Source of the DNA: Sminthopsis crassicaudata | Lineage: Eukaryota | Direction of reading: 5' to 3' | DNA: 64,000 nucleotides | Assembly: GCF_048593235.1 (NCBI RefSeq) | Contig: NC_133620.1 | Coordinates: 444,693,261 to 444,757,260 of the forward strand | In this document: piece by piece, positions 10,693 to 47,971 of the stretch | Numbering within the stretch: the stretch's first letter is position 1 | How the letters are laid out: each line of letters opens with the position of its first letter | Program-made: the position numbers and the translations under genes | Notes under the pieces: model-generated | Told to the model about the DNA's origin: nothing | Seen by the model: only the letters and a program-made list of their open reading frames with translations | Databases searched by the model: none

Positions 10693-10945
10693 ATGAAATC
10701 TTTGTCCAAAAGATGTTTATGGAATCCAACAAATGGCCCCAGGATTCAAAGAACCAAGGGTTGGCTGCTAACAGAGATCTCCATGGGGGACAAGTATCCT
10801 CCAAAAGTGCAAATAGTACCAATAAATACCCAAGATTACCACCAAATAATTTATATAAATTAAATTTCACTTATATAAAGGCTGGAAGGCTGGGGTGTGA
10901 GGAGATTGTTTCTGAATGCGGAATCCTTTTGTGCAGTCTCTTTTC

Positions 10946-12255
10946 CTATAAGGCTAGATCTTGATTCAGGTAATTAATATACTCCTGAACCCAGGCGTCT
11001 CTGGGGTTGGCACACACGTTCTTTTCACTCTTAGTTGTGAACCTGTGGAGTGAGGGGAGAGAACATGAGAGACCAAAGACCTTTTTCAGCTGGAGATGAA
11101 AGGAACAATTCTCTGTTAGCCTCTTCCCAACTCCCTGTAGATTTCTAGAAGGGATTAAGGAACCACTATTCCATCTTTTGAAACCTCCATCAGACCCATT
11201 GAGTCCACCTGTTTCTAGAGACATCTTTAGAAGAGATTATCTCAGTCTCCTCAGCCTCAGATTCCTGTTTCCCTTTATCTCTCCATTGGAGGGATTTGCT
11301 TCCATCTTGTTCTTGGGAGGACCAAACCTGAGCATGGGACCACATGGACCACTGCTCTTCCTTTTATCTACCTGAGTTGCCTCATGTAGCCATTTGGCCA
11401 AATTGCCCAACAGCTTCATTTTCTCTTCTCATCATCTCATCCTTTTTCACCCTAAGGAAACTCAGTAGGTAGATACTCACACCACAGCTGGTTTGGCACA
11501 CTGGCTGCTGATCTCAACATAACTTTTCACACGATGTCTTGGGATCTGCCTTTCATAGGTGTAGCAGCAGAAGGGAGAAATCATGACGCTGTCTGTAAAG
11601 GAAAGAGAGTCATAAAATTAGTAAGGTCATACCTTTAGGTGCTGCAATTATCTCAGGAACATTCTTTCCATCAGGCCCACTGTGGATGTGGTCTCTCATG
11701 TCTCCCTACCCTGGTTCTCTCCAGCACCAGGTCTGACTCTCATCCCACCTGGAGGAGGTCAGACCTGCTCTTCTCCTCCGCAGAAGGGAACACAGAAAAA
11801 ACCTGAAATATGAGAGCTAGAAAGGATGTCAGAGATCCATGCAATTTCTAACTTATAGAGGAATCCAGTTGCTTCAGATCTTATGGCTATTTAGTGTCAG
11901 AGTCATTAGAAGTCAGTCTTGGGCTCCTTCTACTCTTTTCTCCTGCCTTGAACTTACATATTTACTAGCACATGTTGTTAAAGTTAGGTTAATGTTTTCA
12001 AGTCCAAAATGCTTAGAAGGCCTCCCTGTTTCTACCTTCCCACTCTCCCCTCTTCATCCTCCCTCTCCAAACCTTTATCAGACTCCTTTGATCATACTAT
12101 GGGTGCTCTTTGGCCAGAGCTCTATTTAGCTCATAATTGGAGCCTAAACACAACTATAGAAGGCAAGAGGAAGCCCACTTACGTGGTGCAGAGGATGCCA
12201 GAGAGCTGAAGGCCATGACCATGAGGATGGAGAGGGCAGCCACAGAGACCTTCAT
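10946..12255 (-). CDS. CC chemokine gene A (MIP/CCL3-4-5 family), 3 exons: 12183-12255, 11481-11592, 10946-11042; 93 aa
   Basis: Spliced by hand with GT-AG introns in phases 1 and 2: [93 protein letters not shown]. It has a signal peptide, the CC motif, C3, C4 and the CANP..WV motif. Confidence 0.95.
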
Positions 12256-16564: not shown

Positions 16565-16867
16565 CTGAACTCTCTGTCCAATACATATTCGTGGAATCCA
16601 GCAGATGGCTCCAGAATTCAAAGGAACCAAAGTTTAGGTACTAATCAAAGTCTCCATGGGGGACAGGCATCCTTCAAATGTGCAAATAGGACTAATAAAT
16701 ACCCCAAATGCTCTCCCAATAATTTACATAAATTAAATTTCACTGATAAAAATATCTCAGGAAGGCTGGTATCTGGGGAGATTATTTCTGAATGTGGAAT
16801 TCCTAAGCTTGGTCCATTTCCTTTTAAGATTCATTGTTCTAAGCCTCTGAAGCCTTCAATTCAGCTC

Positions 16868-18132
16868 TCAGTCATGTATGTACTTCTGAACCCAGCCATC
16901 ATTTGGGTTGGCACACTTCTCCTGCCCTTTTTTGGTCAGGAAACTGTAGAGTAAGGAAAGAGAATATGAAAGATCAAGGACCTTTCCAACTGGAAATTAA
17001 GGGGAAGTCTCTCTGTTACCCTTTTCTCAACTTTCTGTAGATATCTGGAAGGGACTAAGGAAACACTCTCCCAAGTTCTGAAACCTCCATCAGATCCACA
17101 GAGTCCATCTGTCTCTTTCTAGAGACATCTCCATGAGAGATTTTCTCAGCCTCCTTTCTGACCTCGAATTATTGTTGCTTCCATTCATCCCTCTCCATTG
17201 GAGAGTGTTGTTCACCTCTTGCTCCCAGAAAGACCAAACCTGGACATGGACCACATGGGCCACTGCTCTCCCTTTTATCTCCCTGAGCTGTCTGATGTAG
17301 CCATTTGGCCAAATTGCCAAACAGGTTCATTTTCTCTTTCCATCATCCTACCCGAATCCTCTAAGAAATCTCAATGGGTAGATACTCACACCACAGCTGG
17401 CTGGGAACACAGGCTGCTGGTCTTATAATAGTCTGTCACAAATTTTCTGGGGATCTGCTGTCTGACATGGGAGAAGCAGCAGGCGGTGGGAGTGTTGGAG
17501 CCCAATGTAAAGAAAAGAGTTGCATGAAATCAGTAAGACCATACAGATTCCGTGGGTAAGGTTCTTCATCAGACACACACTGGGGATGTCCTTTCTCATA
17601 TCTCCCCTCTAGTACTAGGCATGGTTCTCTGGGAAGGAGGAAGATGAGACCTGACATTCCCATTCCCAGGTGGGTATCGATGGAGAAAACATAAAAAACT
17701 AGAGATGGATGGGATGTCAAACATCACACTGTTCAGATTCTTTTTTAGAGAGGAAAATGCTTGTCACAAGTAATTTAGTATCAGAGCCAGAACTAGGACC
17801 AAGCTGGATAAAGGCTCAGTCTAGTGATTCTTGCTTGTCTTGATGTTACGTATTAAATAGCAAATCAAGTCAAGAGCATATTCTTAATTACAAGTCTAAA
17901 GGCATTAAAAACCCTATGTGCTCTTGCCCCTGTCATTCAGGGCTCCCCCTCCCCATACTCCCAAATCTCTGTGATCATATCAAGCTAATCTGTCAGCGTT
18001 GTCCCAGAGTATGACTAGAGCCTGGGTACAGACACAGAGGCAGGAGGAAACTCACTTACTTGGTGTAGAGGATGCCAGAGAACTGAAGATCATGACTATG
18101 AGTATGGAAAGGGCAGCCACAGAGACCTTCAT
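16868..18132 (-). pseudogene. CCL4-like gene B1; exons 18060-18132, 17390-17504, 16868-16943; intron-1 acceptor AG>AT
   Basis: Exon frames give [87 protein letters not shown]. The acceptor reads tttacAT|TGGGC at 17505-17506, where gene D has cccAG|TGGGC. It may still make alternative transcripts. Confidence 0.8.
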
Positions 18133-22320: not shown

Positions 22321-23744
22321 TTTTATCTATCATTTTCTTTACCTCAACTTCCCATCTTCCTCACCCTCTCTGAGCTTCTGGTTGATAAGAGAAACAAGAT
22401 ATGAACATATTTCTTCAGCCAATCCAAACACTCCTTCTGTCTTCACACTCTTCATCTAAAGATTTTTTCTAATTTACCCTAAAGGATGGGATTAACTAGT
22501 TGCTTAAGACTTTTATCTAGTACCTTATGACTTACTTTAAAAGAGTTAGAGCCACTTGATTTTTTTTCTTGGCTAAATCAACAGCTCATCTTTATACTAT
22601 ATAGCATATATACACATTGACATGCAGATTCCTGTCTTTATAAACTCTCATTTGAAAACAAATTCAGAGGCAGGATAAGGATTCACATCTACTGAATCTA
22701 AATCAAAAGTAATCAATTTAGTACAGATGCCTCCAACATTAAAAGAAGTACTTGTTAGGCTAAAGTTAAATATACTGAATCTGTGTAGAAGCCCAGCTTA
22801 GGTAAGCTATACATGGTCACTCAGATAGTGAAGCCAGGATTTGGCCTAATTATTCTGACTCTACATGTAACACTTTTTTCTGCTATTATGTCATGAGAAA
22901 TAATTCCCATTTGATGACCTCTTCCCTCATTCTCTTTTTGTGTGACACTGAATTTCCATTGTGCCCTGAGCATATCCCTTTCATATACACTGTTTCCTGA
23001 AAGTTCTCTGACAACATCTCAAGATCATAGGATTGGAGACACAGAAGGGAACCCACCAGACATCTAGTTCAAGACATAAGCAACTAGAGCGTCTCTATGA
23101 CTGGTCACCTGACCTCTGTTTAATGACCTCCAAAGAGAGGAGCCAATTGCCATACTAGGCATCTGATTTCAGGTTTGGAAAGTTCTAATTAGTGGGAGGT
23201 TGCTATTTATCCTATTATTAATCCTCTACCTCCTTGTCATTTTTACCCATTGCTCATTTGGGCAGAAACACTACAAGCCTGACCCTCCTCCTCATAATAG
23301 CTCTTCAAATACTTCAGTAAAACTACCATAACTGCCATGAATTCTTTCCTTTCTTCATTAGCCATCCTTCAACTCATCCTTAAGTGACAGGGACTCTGGA
23401 CCATTCTTCTTCCTGATTAAACACTACTGCTAACCCAATATCTTTCTAAACTGTAGTGCACAGAATTGAACATAGTATTAGAGGCCAGACTATGGTGGGA
23501 TTAGCAATCCTTCTTCTGGGAACCTATGCCTCTCGATGTAGATTAGACATTTGGGGGCATTGAGTTTGCTGAATCAAAATGAGATAGTAATACACTTCAA
23601 CAACCATTTTTTTTCATTCAGAATAAATGCTGCCTAAATCATCTCCCCCTTTCTAGTATGATAGTAAAGGAACTCTATCTGAGCAATCCTATTTCTCTTG
23701 GGAAAACAAAAAAAAACACAGAAAACATAATGGCTTGAAAAAGC

Positions 23745-23750
23745 TTTATT
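23745..23750 (-). terminator. AATAAA polyadenylation signal, C1 (copies at 35076-35081 and 46457-46462)
   Basis: Same conserved context as in gene A. Confidence 0.75.
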
Positions 23751-24003
23751 CTGAACTCTTTTTGTCCAACACATATTCATGGAACTCAGCAGATGGCCCC
23801 AGGTTTCAAAGGAAGCAAAGGTTAGGGCCTAACCCCCATGAGGGACAGGTGTCCTTCAAAGTGAAACTAGTACCAACAAATACCAAAACTTCCAGCTAAT
23901 AATTTAAATAAATTAAATTTAACTGATTAAAACAAGCCAGGAAGGCTGGGTTCTGGGGTGATTTCATCTGAATGTGGAATTCCTTGGGTTAGTCCATATC
24001 CTT

Positions 24004-25262
24004 TTAAGATTCATTGTTCTGGACTCCTGTGGCCTTTAATTTCAGGTCATTCATATAATCCTGAACCCAGGCATGTTTAGGGTTGGCACATATTTCCCAA
24101 TTCTCATTGTTGAAAAACCTGTGGAGTGAGAGAAGAGATGAGAGACCCAGAAGCTTTTCAGCTGGAGGTGAAGGGAAGGTTTCTCAGTTCCCCACTTCCC
24201 AATTTCCTCTAAATGTCTGGAAGCGATTACCCACTTTTCCATTTTCTGAAACCTATTGAGTTCATCTGTCTCTTTCTAGAGACATGCCCGGGAGACATTT
24301 CTTAGCCTTCTTCCACTTATCACTGGAACTTGGAGGCAATTATTCCTGGGAGAACCTAACCTGGGCATGGAACCACAGGGGCTATGGCAGCCTCACCTGA
24401 GTTGCCTCAGCGACCCCTTAGGCCAAATTCCCAAATGGTTTCATTTTTCTTTCCTTTATCCCCTTTATTCTTTAAGGAGACTCGGGGGTAGATACTTACA
24501 CCACACCTGGTTGAGAACAACGGCTGCTGGTTTTATAATAGCCAATCACAGAGTTTCTGGAAATTCGGTTTTTGACATAGTGGAAGCAACAGGTATCAGA
24601 ATGGCCGGGACCAGCTGTAAAGGAAAGAGTTGCCTTAAGTTAGTTTGGCCATAGTCTCACATAGCACATTCCTTAGATGCTTTTCATCAAGTACACTCCT
24701 TCATGTCTCCCTAACCCTGGTTCTCTCCAGCACCAGGTATGATTCCCATTGCACCTGGAGGAAGGCAGACCTGCTCTCCTCATCTCCATAAAGGGACCTA
24801 GGGAAAAACCTGAAATAGGAGAGCTAGGAAGAATGGCAGAGATCTACTCATGCAACTCCTATCTTTTATGGAGGAATCCAGTTGCTGCAGAAACCAAGAG
24901 TATTTAGTATCAAAGTCAAAACTAGAACCTAGTTGGACTAGAGGACAATCTAATGCCCCTTCTTCTCTTTTCTCCTGCCTTGAACTTACATGTTAACCAG
25001 CACATATTGTCAAGGGCATGTTAATGCTTTCAAGCCCCAAATCTATAGAAAACCTCTTACATCTTCACTCCCCTCTACACCCTCATCAGATTCCTTTAAT
25101 CACACTATGGCTCTCTCTGATCAAGGCTCTGTCCAGCTCACAACCAGAACCTGGGCAAAGCCACAAACATTAGGAACAACCCCACTTACTTATTGCCGAG
25201 CATTCAGGAAAATTGAAGGCCATGACCATGAGGATGGAGAGTGCAACCACAAAGAACTTCAT
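24004..25262 (-). CDS. Divergent CC chemokine gene C1; exons 25190-25262, 24500-24614, 24004-24118; 100 aa
   Basis: Canonical GT-AG splicing gives MKFFVVALSILMVMAFNFPECSAI-TGPGHSDTCCFHYVKNRISRNSVIGYYKTSSRCSQPGVV-FFNNENWEICANPKHAWVQDYMNDLKLKATGVQNNES*. All four chemokine cysteines are present. Confidence 0.93.
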
Positions 25263-25349
25263 GATCCTGAGAGGAGAGAGGAGCTGGAGGAGCAGAGCAC
25301 AGGCTTAGACACACTGTAGCTTTGTGTCTATCTCATTTTTTGGTCCCCT

Positions 25350-25428
25350 TTTTATAGGATTTTGGGAGTTCATGAAAAGAGGGAACCAACAGAAAATGAA
25401 TGGAAATCCTAAGAAAGAGATGATGTCA
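25350..25428 (-). promoter_or_regulatory. C1 core promoter: TATAAAA 25350-25356, GGATTTCC, ATF/CRE-like TGACATCA 25421-25428 (copies: TATA 36679-36685 and 48059-48065)
   Basis: Motifs read directly at positions homologous to the other paralogs. Confidence 0.7.
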
Positions 25429-35332: not shown

Positions 35333-36591
35333 TTAAGATTCATTGTTCTGGACTCCTGTGGCCTTTAATTTCAGGTCATTCATATAATCCTGAACCCAGG
35401 CATGTTTAGGGTTGGCACATATTTCCCAATTCTCATTGTTGAAAAACCTGTGGAGTGAGAGAAGAGATGAGAGACCCAGAAGCTTTTCAGCTGGAGGTGA
35501 AGGGAAGGTTTCTCAGTTCCCCACTTCCCAATTTCCTCTAAATGTCTGGAAGGGATTAACCACTTTTCCATTTTCTGAAACCTATTGAGTTCATCTGTCT
35601 CTTTCTAGAGACATGCCCGGGAGACATTTCTTAGCCTTCTTCCACTTATCACTGGAACTTGGAGGCAATTATTCCTGGGAGAACCTAACCTGGGCATGGA
35701 ACCACAGGGGCTATGGCAGCCTCACCTGAGTTGCCTCAGCGACCCCTTTGGCCAAATTCCCAAATGGTTTCATTTTTCTTTCCTTTATCCCCTTTATTCT
35801 TTAAGGAGACTCGGGGGTAGATACTTACACCACACCTGGTTGAGAACAACGGCTGCTGGTTTTATAATAGCCAATCACAGAGTTTCTGGAAATTCGGTTT
35901 TTGACATAGTGGAAGCAACAGGTATCAGAATGGCCGGGACCAGCTGTAAAGGAAAGAGTTGCCTTAAGTTAGTTTGGCCATAGTCTCACATAGCACATTC
36001 CTTAGATGCTTTTCATCAAGTACGCTCCTTCATGTCTCCCTAACCCTGGTTCTCTCCAGCACCAGGTATGATTCCCATTGCACCTGGAGGAAGGCAGACC
36101 TGCTCTCCTCATCTCCATAAAGGGACCTAGGGAAAAACCTGAAATAGGAGAGCTAGGAAGAATGGCAGAGATCTACTCATGCAACTCCTATCTTTTATGG
36201 AGGAATCCAGTTGCTGCAGAAACCAAGAGTATTTAGTATCAAAGTCAGAACTAGAACCTAGTTGGACTAGAGGACAATCTAATGCCCCTTCTTCTCTTTT
36301 CTCCTGCCTTGAACTTACATGTTAACCAGCACATATTGTCAAGGGCATGTTAATGCTTTCAAGCCCCAAATCTATAGAAAACCTCTTACATCTTCACTCC
36401 CCTCTACACCCTCATCAGATTCCTTTAATCACACTATGGCTCTCTCTGATCAAGGCTCTGTCCAGCTCACAACCAGAACCTGGGCAAAGCCACAAACATT
36501 AGGAACAACCCCACTTACTTATTGCCGAGCATTCAGGAAAATTGAAGGCCATGACCATGAGGATGGAGAGTGCAACCACAAAGAACTTCAT
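35333..36591 (-). CDS. CC chemokine gene C2; exons 36519-36591, 35829-35943, 35333-35447; 100 aa
   Basis: Offset 11329 from C1. The coding exons read identical to C1 and the splice sites are intact. Confidence 0.93.
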
Positions 36592-46713: not shown

Positions 46714-47971
46714 TTAAGATTCATTGTTCTGGACTCCTGTGGCCTTTAATTTCAGGTCATTCATATAATCCTGAACCCAGGCATGTTTAGGGTTGGCACA
46801 TATTTCCCAATTCTCATTGTTGAAAAACCTGTGGAGTGAGAGAAGAGATGAGAGACCCAGAAGCTTTTCAGCTGGAGATGAAGGGAAGGTTACTCAGTTC
46901 CCCACTTCCCAATTTCCTCTAAATGTCTGGAAGCGATTACCCACTTTTCCATTTTCTGAAACCTATTGAGTACATCTGTCTCTTTCTAGAGACATGCCCG
47001 GGAGACATTTCTTAGCCTTCTTCCACTATCATTGGAACTTGGAGGCAATTATTCCTGGGAGAACCTAACCTGGGCATGGAACCACAGGGGCTATGGCAGC
47101 CTCACCTGAGTTGCCTCAGCGACCCCTTTGGCCAAATTCCCAAATGGTTTCATTTTTCTTTCCTTTATCCCCTTTATTCTTTAAGGAGACTCGGGGGTAG
47201 ATACTTACACCACACCTGGTTGAGAACAACGGCTGCTGGTTTTATAATAGCCAATCACAGAGTTTCTGGAAATTCGGTTTTTGACATAGTGGAAGCAACA
47301 GGTATCAGAATGGCCGGGACCAGCTGTAAAGGAAAGAGTTGCCTTAAGTTAGTTTGGCCATAGTCTCACATAGCACATTCCTTAGATGCTTTTCATCAAG
47401 TACACTCCTTCATGTCTCCCTAACCTTGGTTCTCTCCAGCACCAGGTATGATTCCCATTGCACCTGGAGGAAGGCAGACCTGCTCTCCTCATCTCCATAA
47501 AGGGACCTAGGGAAAAACCTGAAATAGGAGAGCTAGGAAGAATGGCAGAGATCTACTCATGCAACTCCTATCTTTTATGGAGGAATCCAGTTGCTGCAGA
47601 AACCAAGAGTATTTAGTATCAAAGTCAGAACTAGAACCTAGTTGGACTAGAGGACAATCTAATGCCCCTTCTTCTCTTTTCTCCTGCCTTGAACTTACAT
47701 GTTAACCAGCACATATTGTCAAGGGCATGTTAATGCTTTCAAGCCCCAAATCTATAGAAAACCTCTTACATCTTCACTCCCCTCTACACCCTCATCAGAT
47801 TCCTTTAATCACACTATGGCTCTCTCTGATCAAGGCTCTGTCCAGCTCACAACCAGAACCTGGGCAAAGCCACAAACATTAGGAACAAGCCCACTTACTT
47901 ATTGCCGAGCATTCAGGAAAATTGAAGGCCATGACCATGAGGATGGAGAGTGCAACCACAAAGAACTTCAT
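46714..47971 (-). CDS. CC chemokine gene C3; exons 47899-47971, 47209-47323, 46714-46828; 100 aa
   Basis: Offset 11380 from C2. The coding exons read identical to C1 and C2 and the splice sites are intact. Confidence 0.93.

What the first reader, a model, noticed from the sequence alone, without database searches (positions are those of the whole stretch)
24088..24117. C genes: basic 40s loop replaced by an acidic one, apparently through a compensated frameshift
Between the exon-3 Phe and Cys4, D has [11 protein letters not shown] has FLTKKGQEKC and A has FTTKSEKNVC. C has FFNNENWEIC, the same length but with no basic residue and no conserved Thr. Shifted by one base, the DNA reads T TTT TCA ACA ATG AGA ATT GGG AAA TA TGT, i.e. 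F-S-T-M-R-I-G-K, with Thr and basic residues back in register. By my count this matches gene A at 14 of 27 nt against 9 of 27 in frame. One T gained in the T-run plus one A lost from the A-run would convert FSTMRIGKIC into FFNNENWEIC. The 40s-loop BBXB motif is the established GAG-binding site of CCL3/4/5, so C may be a GAG-independent, freely diffusing or decoy/antagonist chemokine. It is the gene amplified as three intact copies.
Basis: partly seen in the sequence, partly recalled or inferred. Interest (0 to 1): 0.8.

Follow-up and report, generated by a model that had tools for sequence, protein, structure and literature searches.

The report
Acidic-loop chemokine, no frameshift needed
Three identical, highly expressed copies of a dunnart CCL3/4-like chemokine gene have swapped the usual basic sugar-binding loop for an acidic one, but relatives show this came from ordinary in-frame point mutations, not a compensated frameshift.

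Summary
The window is the CC-chemokine cluster of the fat-tailed dunnart (Sminthopsis crassicaudata). Minus-strand codons 24117-24088 encode FFNNENWEIC in three intact C copies with identical coding sequence. The mRNA is abundant and spliced as modelled.

The frameshift reading fails. Orthologues have the same 100-residue length. Their loops are FVTKMKREIC and FVTKMEWDIC (Antechinus) and FVTKRNRSIC (Tasmanian devil). Dunnart codons 6-9 (AAT TGG GAA ATA) each match an orthologue codon in the present frame. The T-run comes from a G>T substitution, and GGGAAATATGT is unchanged, so no A was lost. The shifted match to gene A arises in 22-34% of shuffles.

What remains is a dunnart-lineage charge reversal (loop net +2/+3 to -2, no Lys or Arg) in a fast-evolving dasyurid-specific subfamily (dN/dS about 1, exons faster than introns). 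Weaker loop-mediated glycosaminoglycan binding and oligomerisation is plausible but untested. The mature protein stays basic (net +2).

The parts
24088..24117 (-). C1 40s loop, codons 64-73 (F F N N E N W E I C). It forms the beta2-beta3 hairpin turn of the chemokine fold.
   Evidence: Searches give the sequence. (AF2 model) places beta2 at 62-65, the turn at 66-70 and beta3 at 71-74, with pLDDT about 90. One search shows no variant letters here in RNA contigs.
24004..24118 (-). C1 exon 3 coding part, from the split Val63 codon to the stop TAA at 24006-24004. Includes the dasyurid-specific C-terminal extension (codons 88-100, 24045-24007).
   Evidence: One search shows the splice joint 24500|24118. 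One search shows a net -5 nt indel relative to B and D that takes the ancestral TGA out of frame.
24500..24614 (-). C1 exon 2: mature N-terminus, CC motif, N-loop, beta1 and Cys3.
   Evidence: One search gives the sequence. One search shows the joints 25190|24614 and 24500|24118, both GT..AG on the minus strand, in a 482-nt contig of depth 1173.
25190..25262 (-). C1 exon 1 coding part: ATG at 25262-25260, signal peptide, donor GTAAGT starting at 25189.
35333..36591 (-). C2 gene from ATG to stop, with coding sequence identical to C1. Loop at 35417-35446.
46714..47971 (-). C3 gene from ATG to stop, with coding sequence identical to C1. Loop at 46798-46827.
24595..24612 (-). Second dunnart-specific substitution cluster, codons 26-31 of the mature N-terminus (GPGHSD against SPTDPG in relatives). 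All changes are in frame.

Best explanation
The C genes are functional, strongly transcribed members of a dasyurid-specific CCL3/CCL4-like subfamily. Members are 100 residues long and carry a C-terminal extension. On the Sminthopsis lineage the 40s loop changed from an ancestral FVTK(R/M)(N/K)R(E/S)IC-like basic state to FFNNENWEIC. This took about seven in-frame point substitutions in codons 65-68 and 70: GTG>TTC, ACC>AAC, AAA>AAT, AGG>GAG and AGG>TGG. The change is part of a gene-wide acceleration at the surface segments (N-terminus, N-loop, 30s region, 40s loop). The derived gene was then recently amplified with its roughly 11.3-kb unit into three near-identical copies. No frameshift is needed or indicated. 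Inferred, not shown: without Lys or Arg and without the nearly invariant Thr, the loop can no longer provide the BBXB contacts. In CCL3/4/5 those contacts bind heparan sulfate, support higher-order oligomers, and are gripped by receptor N-termini and by viral chemokine-binding proteins. The protein therefore probably binds matrix differently or more weakly through this site.
For: Species and gene identity:
- P0001 is 100% identical to the modelled protein and is named 'C-C motif chemokine 4-like', Sminthopsis crassicaudata, with Pfam PF00048.

Orthologues:
- They share the length, signal peptide and C-terminal extension, and have basic or intermediate loops.
- Loop DNA: dunnart TTT TTC AAC AAT GAG AAT TGG GAA ATA; Antechinus Ca TTT GTG ACC AAA ATG AAA AGG GAA ATA; Antechinus Cb TTT GTG ACC AAA ATG GAA TGG GAT ATA; devil TTT GTG ACC AAA AGG AAT AGA AGT ATA.
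- Matches out of 30: present frame 22, 21 and 19; reader-implied ancestor 18, 16 and 18. The best compensated pair adds at most 2 matches and sits at a different place for each outgroup.
- A gain of 2 or more occurs in 30% of substitution-only simulations.
- There are no indels in the 300-nt coding sequence across four lineages, against 13 indel events in 990 intron columns.

Phylogeny and rates:
- Tree: the C family is supported 100/100, and dunnart C1-3 (100/100) is sister to the Antechinus plus devil clade (98/97).
- Dunnart-specific changes: exons 28 of 251, introns 54 of 829, Fisher p=0.02. Of the exon changes 22 are nonsynonymous and 6 synonymous.
- Given the exon rate, the loop cluster is not exceptional (permutation p=0.23).

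Expression and structure:
- A spliced mRNA contig of depth 1173 has both joints at the modelled GT..AG sites.
- The derived exon is held by 20 runs of the same species from seven studies.
- The fold matches CCL4, CCL5 and CCL3 with target-normalised TM-score about 0.85.

Literature on loop function:
- PMC7138053 covers the BBXB motif and the 44AANA47-CCL5 mutant.
- PMC3145792 covers viral chemokine-binding proteins.
Against: - Five to seven changes in 12-18 nt is a marked local cluster when measured against the intron rate (binomial p=6e-4). A single complex multi-nucleotide event cannot be excluded.
- No orthologue from another Sminthopsinae species was available, so the order of steps on the dunnart branch is unseen.
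- Changes were polarised from paralogues and distant outgroups, not from a rooted C-family tree.
- dN/dS is about 1 (0.94-1.07). This fits neutral drift as well as a mix of purifying and positive selection.
- The functional effect is inference only. The mature protein remains net +2 with pI 8.4. It keeps the basic N-loop sequence KNRISR and has Lys/His in the 50s region, so GAG binding may be relocated rather than lost.
Confidence: 0.85

Rival explanations
1. One T was gained in the T-run and one A was lost from the A-run, converting an ancestral FSTMRIGKIC into FFNNENWEIC. This would be a compensated +1/-1 frameshift across the whole loop.
For: The +1 frame reads F-S-T-M-R-I-G-K. Against paralogue A, matches rise from 12 to 17 of 30.
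Against: No orthologue has the predicted state. The 3' anchor GGGAAATATGT is identical in Antechinus Ca and is read in the same frame (R/W-E-I-C). TTTTT differs from the orthologues' TTTGT by a G>T substitution at equal length. The implied ancestor matches orthologues worse than the present frame does: 18, 16 and 18 against 22, 21 and 19. Shifting lowers the match to B and D. The gain against A is within chance, at 22-34% of shuffles.
Confidence: 0.02
2. A shorter compensated frameshift or a single complex multi-nucleotide event confined to codons 65-70. One example is loss of AA from the A-run and gain of two bases near TTGG. Another is a template-switch type mutation.
For: Against Antechinus Ca, an offset of 2 nt over columns 5-19 raises matches from 22 to 24 and brings a shared AATGA into register. 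The changes are tightly clustered, and 4 of the 5 scored loop changes are transversions.
Against: The shared ATG is Antechinus-specific. The devil, a second species' RNA contig (loose end reading GTGACCAAAAGGA) and paralogue D all have AGG, so the AATGA register match is coincidental. The best offset differs for each outgroup. A gain of 2 or more arises in 30% of substitution-only simulations. Codons 69-72 match orthologue codons in frame. An equally dense in-frame cluster sits at codons 26-31.
Confidence: 0.06
3. The loop change is neutral decay. The C subfamily is under relaxed constraint and drifting toward pseudogenes, so the acidic loop has no adaptive or functional meaning.
For: dN/dS is about 1 over the whole coding sequence. 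The nearly invariant Thr66 is lost.
Against: The reading frame is intact in all six gene copies compared at the DNA level across three species. There are no indels in the coding sequence, where 3.6 frameshifting ones are expected at the intron rate (P=0.026). All four Cys and W80, V81, Q82 and Y84 are invariant, and the signal peptide is conserved. The mRNA is correctly spliced and very abundant. The three-copy amplification keeps identical coding sequences while introns and UTRs differ at 8-11 sites. The nonsynonymous rate exceeds the intron rate (0.110 against 0.065, p=0.03).
Confidence: 0.2
4. A micro gene conversion copied the acidic loop from another chemokine paralogue.
For: Clustered differences within an otherwise similar exon are the usual signature of short conversion tracts.
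Against: No sequence within 4 mismatches of the 18-nt derived core exists in the window, apart from the three C copies and one unrelated 4-mismatch hit. None of paralogues A, B or D resembles the core. Only this window was searched.
Confidence: 0.02

Closest known systems
Human CCL4 (MIP-1beta), CCL3 (MIP-1alpha) and CCL5
   Same: Same CC chemokine fold; the best Foldseek hit is 3tn2 (CCL4 P8A) with target-normalised TM-score 0.85. Same four Cys, same three-exon structure and same FxxxxxxxxC spacing of the 40s loop. The gene lies in a CCL3/4-like cluster.
   Different: CCL3/4/5 carry a BBXB motif in the 40s loop that binds GAGs: R46/R48, K45/R46/K48 and R44/K45/R47 respectively (PMC7138053). 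Dunnart C has no Lys or Arg there, a net charge of -2 and a Trp. It lacks the conserved Thr and has a 9-residue longer C-terminus.
Engineered 44AANA47-CCL5 and CCL4 K45A/R46A/K48A
   Same: The basic 40s-loop residues are removed while the fold is retained. Dunnart C is a natural counterpart of this kind of change.
   Different: The mutants are neutralised to Ala. The dunnart loop is charge-reversed (two Glu) and evolved together with many other surface changes. The mutant phenotypes (less heparin binding, no higher oligomers, no in vivo recruitment) are only a guide.
Antechinus flavipes Cb (P0004) and Ca (P0002); Sarcophilus harrisii P0005 and P0006
   Same: Orthologous subfamily: 100 aa, the same signal peptide, the same C-terminal extension and the same B/C tandem arrangement. 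Cb also has Trp70 and a net -1 loop.
   Different: All keep Val65, Thr66 and Lys67. Ca and the devil copies keep three basic residues.
Tasmanian devil CCLD5-CCLD10 expansion (Morris et al. 2015, PMC4662006)
   Same: A published devil-specific tandem expansion of CCL4-related genes without opossum orthologues. It shows that this part of the dasyurid chemokine repertoire is known to be dynamic.
   Different: Correspondence of those genes to the C subfamily was not checked. No loop charge change is described in the passages read.
Teleost CC chemokines with non-basic 40s loops (e.g. mudskipper ccl38 duplicate 6, P0134)
   Same: Natural CC domains with no Lys or Arg, or with net negative charge, in the 8 residues before Cys4.
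   Different: They are distant fish (and one lizard) lineages, not the mammalian CCL3/4 group. Among the 187 CC domains examined, the only mammalian loops with no Lys/Arg or with net negative charge were dunnart C and Antechinus Cb.

Membership tests
CC chemokine (Pfam PF00048, IL8-like fold) | Adjacent CC motif plus two further Cys at canonical spacing | tested here: met
   C33, C34, C57 and C73 are invariant in the alignment.
CC chemokine (Pfam PF00048, IL8-like fold) | Profile match to PF00048 | tested here: met
   A precomputed PF00048.26 hit is listed for P0001.
CC chemokine (Pfam PF00048, IL8-like fold) | Three-stranded sheet plus C-terminal helix | tested here: met
   The AF2 core has pLDDT about 90, with E49-52, E62-65, E71-74 and H79-85. 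Foldseek hits CCL4, CCL5, CCL3, CCL14 and CCL16 at probability 1.00.
CC chemokine (Pfam PF00048, IL8-like fold) | Signal peptide and three-exon gene that is transcribed and spliced | tested here: met
   Gene model. Spliced contig with both joints at GT..AG.
MIP-1 group (CCL3/CCL4/CCL5-type GAG-binding, polymerising chemokines) | BBXB basic motif in the 40s loop | tested here: not met
   The loop FFNNENWEIC has no Lys or Arg and a net charge of -2.
MIP-1 group (CCL3/CCL4/CCL5-type GAG-binding, polymerising chemokines) | Closest sequence and structure relatives are CCL3 and CCL4 | tested here: met
   The source names it CCL4-like. The top structural hit is CCL4, at 45% identity.
MIP-1 group (CCL3/CCL4/CCL5-type GAG-binding, polymerising chemokines) | Pro8 before the CC motif, required for CCL3/4 polymerisation (PMC4355285) | tested here: inconclusive
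   The predicted mature N-terminus is ITGPGHSDTCC, with Pro at -7 rather than -4/-3. The signal cleavage site is only predicted.
MIP-1 group (CCL3/CCL4/CCL5-type GAG-binding, polymerising chemokines) | Heparin binding, oligomerisation and CCR1/CCR5 agonism | not testable with these tools
   These need recombinant protein assays.
Compensated frameshift | Orthologues or outgroups align better with an offset between two indel sites than in register | tested here: not met
In-register matches are 22, 21 and 19 of 30. The best offset of any kind gains 2 or fewer and is inconsistent between outgroups. The null gives such a gain 30% of the time.
Compensated frameshift | Flanking indel sites differ in length from the ancestral sequence | tested here: not met
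   TTTGT against TTTTT is a substitution. GGGAAATATGT is identical in Antechinus Ca. Exon 3 has the same length in all four lineages.

The most novel reading that the evidence does not exclude
Dunnart C is a naturally evolved, positively selected, 40s-loop-null MIP-1-family chemokine. The charge reversal, together with the remodelled N-terminus, would uncouple it from heparan-sulfate presentation and polymerisation through the loop. It could also help it evade pathogen or tick chemokine-binding proteins that grip the basic loop. The result would be a soluble long-range agonist or a dominant-negative modulator, whose advantage drove the recent three-fold amplification.
Probability: 0.2. Interest if true: 0.6.

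Novelty: new variant of a known kind. Interest (0 to 1): 0.35.

Why it matters
The basic 40s loop is the textbook GAG-binding and oligomerisation site of CCL3/4/5. Until now it has been studied by engineered alanine mutants. A natural, expressed and amplified mammalian paralogue with a charge-reversed loop, plus orthologues holding the basic and intermediate states, gives a ready-made evolutionary series: devil, Antechinus Ca, Antechinus Cb, dunnart. That series could test how much chemokine function depends on this site. The negative result matters as well. An apparent compensated frameshift inferred from a distant paralogue in A/T-rich sequence disappears once orthologues are consulted.

Tried and rejected
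- Any compensated indel pair of 1-2 nt: scanned exhaustively. It gains at most 2 matches, is inconsistent between outgroups and lies within the substitution-only null.
- Micro-conversion donor: none in the window.
- Assembly error or single-individual artefact: rejected. The derived exon is held by 20 runs of the same species from seven studies and is in spliced RNA contigs.
- Dead pseudogene: unlikely, given an intact frame in every copy and species, conserved scaffold residues and abundant spliced mRNA.
- Transversion excess as a sign of a special mutational event: not significant.
- Search for the derived loop in another species: only the dunnart's own runs hold it. Other Sminthopsis species may simply not be indexed, so this is uninformative.
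- P0005 (second devil copy): DNA was not on record.
- Notebook search by words found nothing further.

Full report
**What is at the coordinates**

The feature lies on the minus strand. After the acceptor cacag, exon 3 starts at 24118. Positions 24117-24088 read TTT TTC AAC AAT GAG AAT TGG GAA ATA TGT, which is FFNNENWEIC.

A tblastn of the exon against the window finds nine CC-chemokine third exons, all on the minus strand:
- A, at 11041
- B1-B4, at 16942, 28269, 39627 and 50998
- C1-C3, at 24117, 35446 and 46827
- D, at 60405

The C1 model is:
- exon 1: 25262-25190
- exon 2: 24614-24500
- exon 3: 24118-24004, stop included

The three C copies have identical 300-nt coding sequences and differ at 8-11 intron or UTR sites.

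**Identity**

The mature part of the protein finds a 100% identical 100-residue protein, P0001. It is named 'C-C motif chemokine 4-like' from Sminthopsis crassicaudata and carries Pfam PF00048.

An AlphaFold model built on alignment A1 has a confident chemokine core. Strands lie at 49-52, 62-65 and 71-74, and a helix starts at 79. The turn at residues 66-70 (NNENW) is the 40s loop. Foldseek puts CCL4, CCL5, CCL3, CCL14 and CCL16 on top, with target-normalised TM-score about 0.85.

**Expression**

Contigs of public RNA runs of the same species were laid on 23700-25400. One 482-nt contig of word depth 1173 joins 25190 to 24614 and 24500 to 24118. Both joints are GT..AG on the minus strand, and intron depth is about 3. 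No variant letters are reported inside 24088-24117.

Intron and UTR markers that distinguish C2 and C3 from C1 also appear in the runs. The derived exon is held by 20 runs of this species from seven studies. The gene is therefore real, spliced as modelled, abundant in some libraries and not an assembly artefact.

**Orthologues decide the mechanism**

A search with the Antechinus protein recovers a 100-residue subfamily. Members share the signal peptide and a C-terminal extension ending ..K(A)(S/T)GVQ(N/K)NES.

| Gene | Protein | Loop | Loop DNA (codons 64-72) |
|---|---|---|---|
| Dunnart C | P0001 | FFNNENWEIC | TTT TTC AAC AAT GAG AAT TGG GAA ATA |
| Antechinus Ca | P0002 | FVTKMKREIC | TTT GTG ACC AAA ATG AAA AGG GAA ATA |
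| Antechinus Cb | P0004 | FVTKMEWDIC | TTT GTG ACC AAA ATG GAA TGG GAT ATA |
| Devil | P0006 | FVTKRNRSIC | TTT GTG ACC AAA AGG AAT AGA AGT ATA |
| Devil | P0005 | FVTKRNRSIC | DNA not on record |

The DNA was fetched. Four points follow from it:
- Dunnart codons 69-72 each equal a codon of an orthologue in the present frame: AAT (devil), TGG (Antechinus Cb), GAA (Antechinus Ca) and ATA (all).
- The T-run differs from TTTGT by a G>T substitution, not by length.
- Exon 3 and the whole coding sequence have the same length in all lineages.

A contig from a second, unnamed species ends in GTGACCAAAAGGA (V T K R). This again matches the ancestral-type sequence.

**Quantitative comparison of frames**

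Matches out of 30:

| Compared with | Present frame | Reader-implied ancestor |
|---|---|---|
| Antechinus Ca | 22 | 18 |
| Antechinus Cb | 21 | 16 |
| Devil | 19 | 18 |

An exhaustive scan of compensated 1-2 nt offsets gains at most 2 matches. The best position differs for each outgroup. Such a gain arises in 30% of substitution-only simulations.

But it reverses against B (16 to 12) and D (15 to 14). It also occurs in 22% of composition-preserving shuffles against A, and in 34% for any of the three paralogues.

Antechinus Cb (net -1, with Trp70) is an in-frame intermediate.

**Evolutionary context**

A whole-gene maximum-likelihood tree gives the C family 100/100 support. Dunnart C1-3 (100/100) is sister to the Antechinus plus devil clade (98/97). 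The three dunnart copies are therefore a recent lineage-specific amplification.

Thr66 and Lys67 are present in the other C genes, in marsupial CCL4-like proteins and in a flamingo. A gecko keeps Thr66 but has Leu at 67. This polarises the dunnart state as derived.

The gene is fast evolving:
- Exon K2P distances are 0.18-0.22, against 0.10-0.13 for introns. NG86 dN/dS is 0.97-1.07 for dunnart against the others.
- Dunnart-specific changes number 28 of 251 exon sites against 54 of 829 intron sites (p=0.02). Of the exon changes 22 are nonsynonymous and 6 synonymous.
- The changes cluster at codons 26-31 (N-terminus), 41-46 (N-loop), 54-59 and 65-68 (loop).

Against the intron rate, five changes in 12 nt is unusual (p=6e-4). 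Given the exon rate, a cluster of that size is not unusual (permutation p=0.23).

There are no indels in the coding sequence, against 13 events in 990 intron columns. The probability of no frameshifting indel at the intron rate is 0.026. With invariant cysteines and an invariant WVQ.Y motif, this argues for a maintained protein.

**Function (inference)**

Reviews state that the BBXB motif of the 40s loop is the GAG-binding site of CCL3, CCL4 and CCL5. They also report that 44AANA47-CCL5 loses heparin binding, higher oligomers and in vivo recruitment while keeping CCR5 binding (PMC7138053).

Viral chemokine-binding proteins also engage the basic 40s loop (PMC3145792). Pro8 is needed for CCL3/4 polymerisation (PMC4355285).

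Dunnart C has no Lys or Arg in the loop, which carries a net charge of -2. Loop-mediated GAG binding and polymerisation are therefore probably reduced.

However, the mature protein is still net +2 with pI 8.4, because basic residues were gained elsewhere. A 'GAG-independent' protein is therefore not established.

**How unusual**

Nine have no Lys or Arg in the eight residues before Cys4, and 15 are net negative. The six such proteins that were looked up are five teleosts and one lizard. The only mammalian loops with no Lys/Arg or with net negative charge in this set were dunnart C and Antechinus Cb.

A CCL4-related expansion in the devil is already published (PMC4662006).

**Verdict**

The sequence observation is confirmed. 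The compensated frameshift is refuted. What remains is a modestly interesting natural charge-reversal variant of a MIP-1-type chemokine.

Noticed in passing
window 24004-24048 (C1); likewise in C2 and C3; L001:11240-11284: The C-terminal extension of the C subfamily (..LKLKATGVQNNES) arose by a real, uncompensated frame change. Relative to B and D there is a net -5 nt indel around the ancestral ..ELN-TGA. That stop is now out of frame, and former 3'UTR sequence is translated up to a new TAA. The change is shared by dunnart, Antechinus and devil.
   Followed up: partly
L002:10001-11284 (Antechinus Cb, P0004): A second C-family gene has independently acquired Trp at the same loop codon (AGG>TGG) and an acidic drift (FVTKMEWDIC, loop net -1, mature protein net -1). 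Loss of loop basicity therefore recurs in this subfamily.
   Followed up: partly
window 24595-24612: The mature N-terminus, which determines receptor activation in chemokines, carries a dunnart-specific in-frame substitution cluster as dense as the loop cluster (GPGHSD against SPTDPG).
   Followed up: partly
window 10945-12254 (gene A): RNA contigs that overlap C exon 3 only at 24041-24090 run on into sequence encoding FTTKSEKNV. Gene A is therefore also transcribed, with word depth 673 in one run.
   Followed up: no
window 16862-16942 and the other B copies; L001:4268-4348 and L002:18039-18092: The B-type exon 3 has an in-frame TGA after ..YIHD, two codons before ELN-TGA. The same TGA is present in an Antechinus B-like copy whose exon 2 also carries a stop. 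The truncation therefore predates the split of the species.
   Followed up: no
window 23864, 24168, 24182, 24224, 24230, 24420, 24695, 24919: Sites that distinguish C1 from C2 and C3 appear as alternative letters in the RNA-run contigs. More than one C copy is therefore represented in the libraries. The abundant spliced contigs carry the C2/C3 letter at 23864.
   Followed up: partly
window 25200-25202: There is a dunnart-specific Cys at residue 21 (PECSA against PESSA or PKPSA in relatives), just before the predicted signal cleavage site. It would be an unpaired fifth Cys if cleavage occurred upstream of it.
   Followed up: no
window 57640-57981: A run of 342 N (assembly gap or masked stretch) lies between B4 and D. 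It was left untouched.
   Followed up: no
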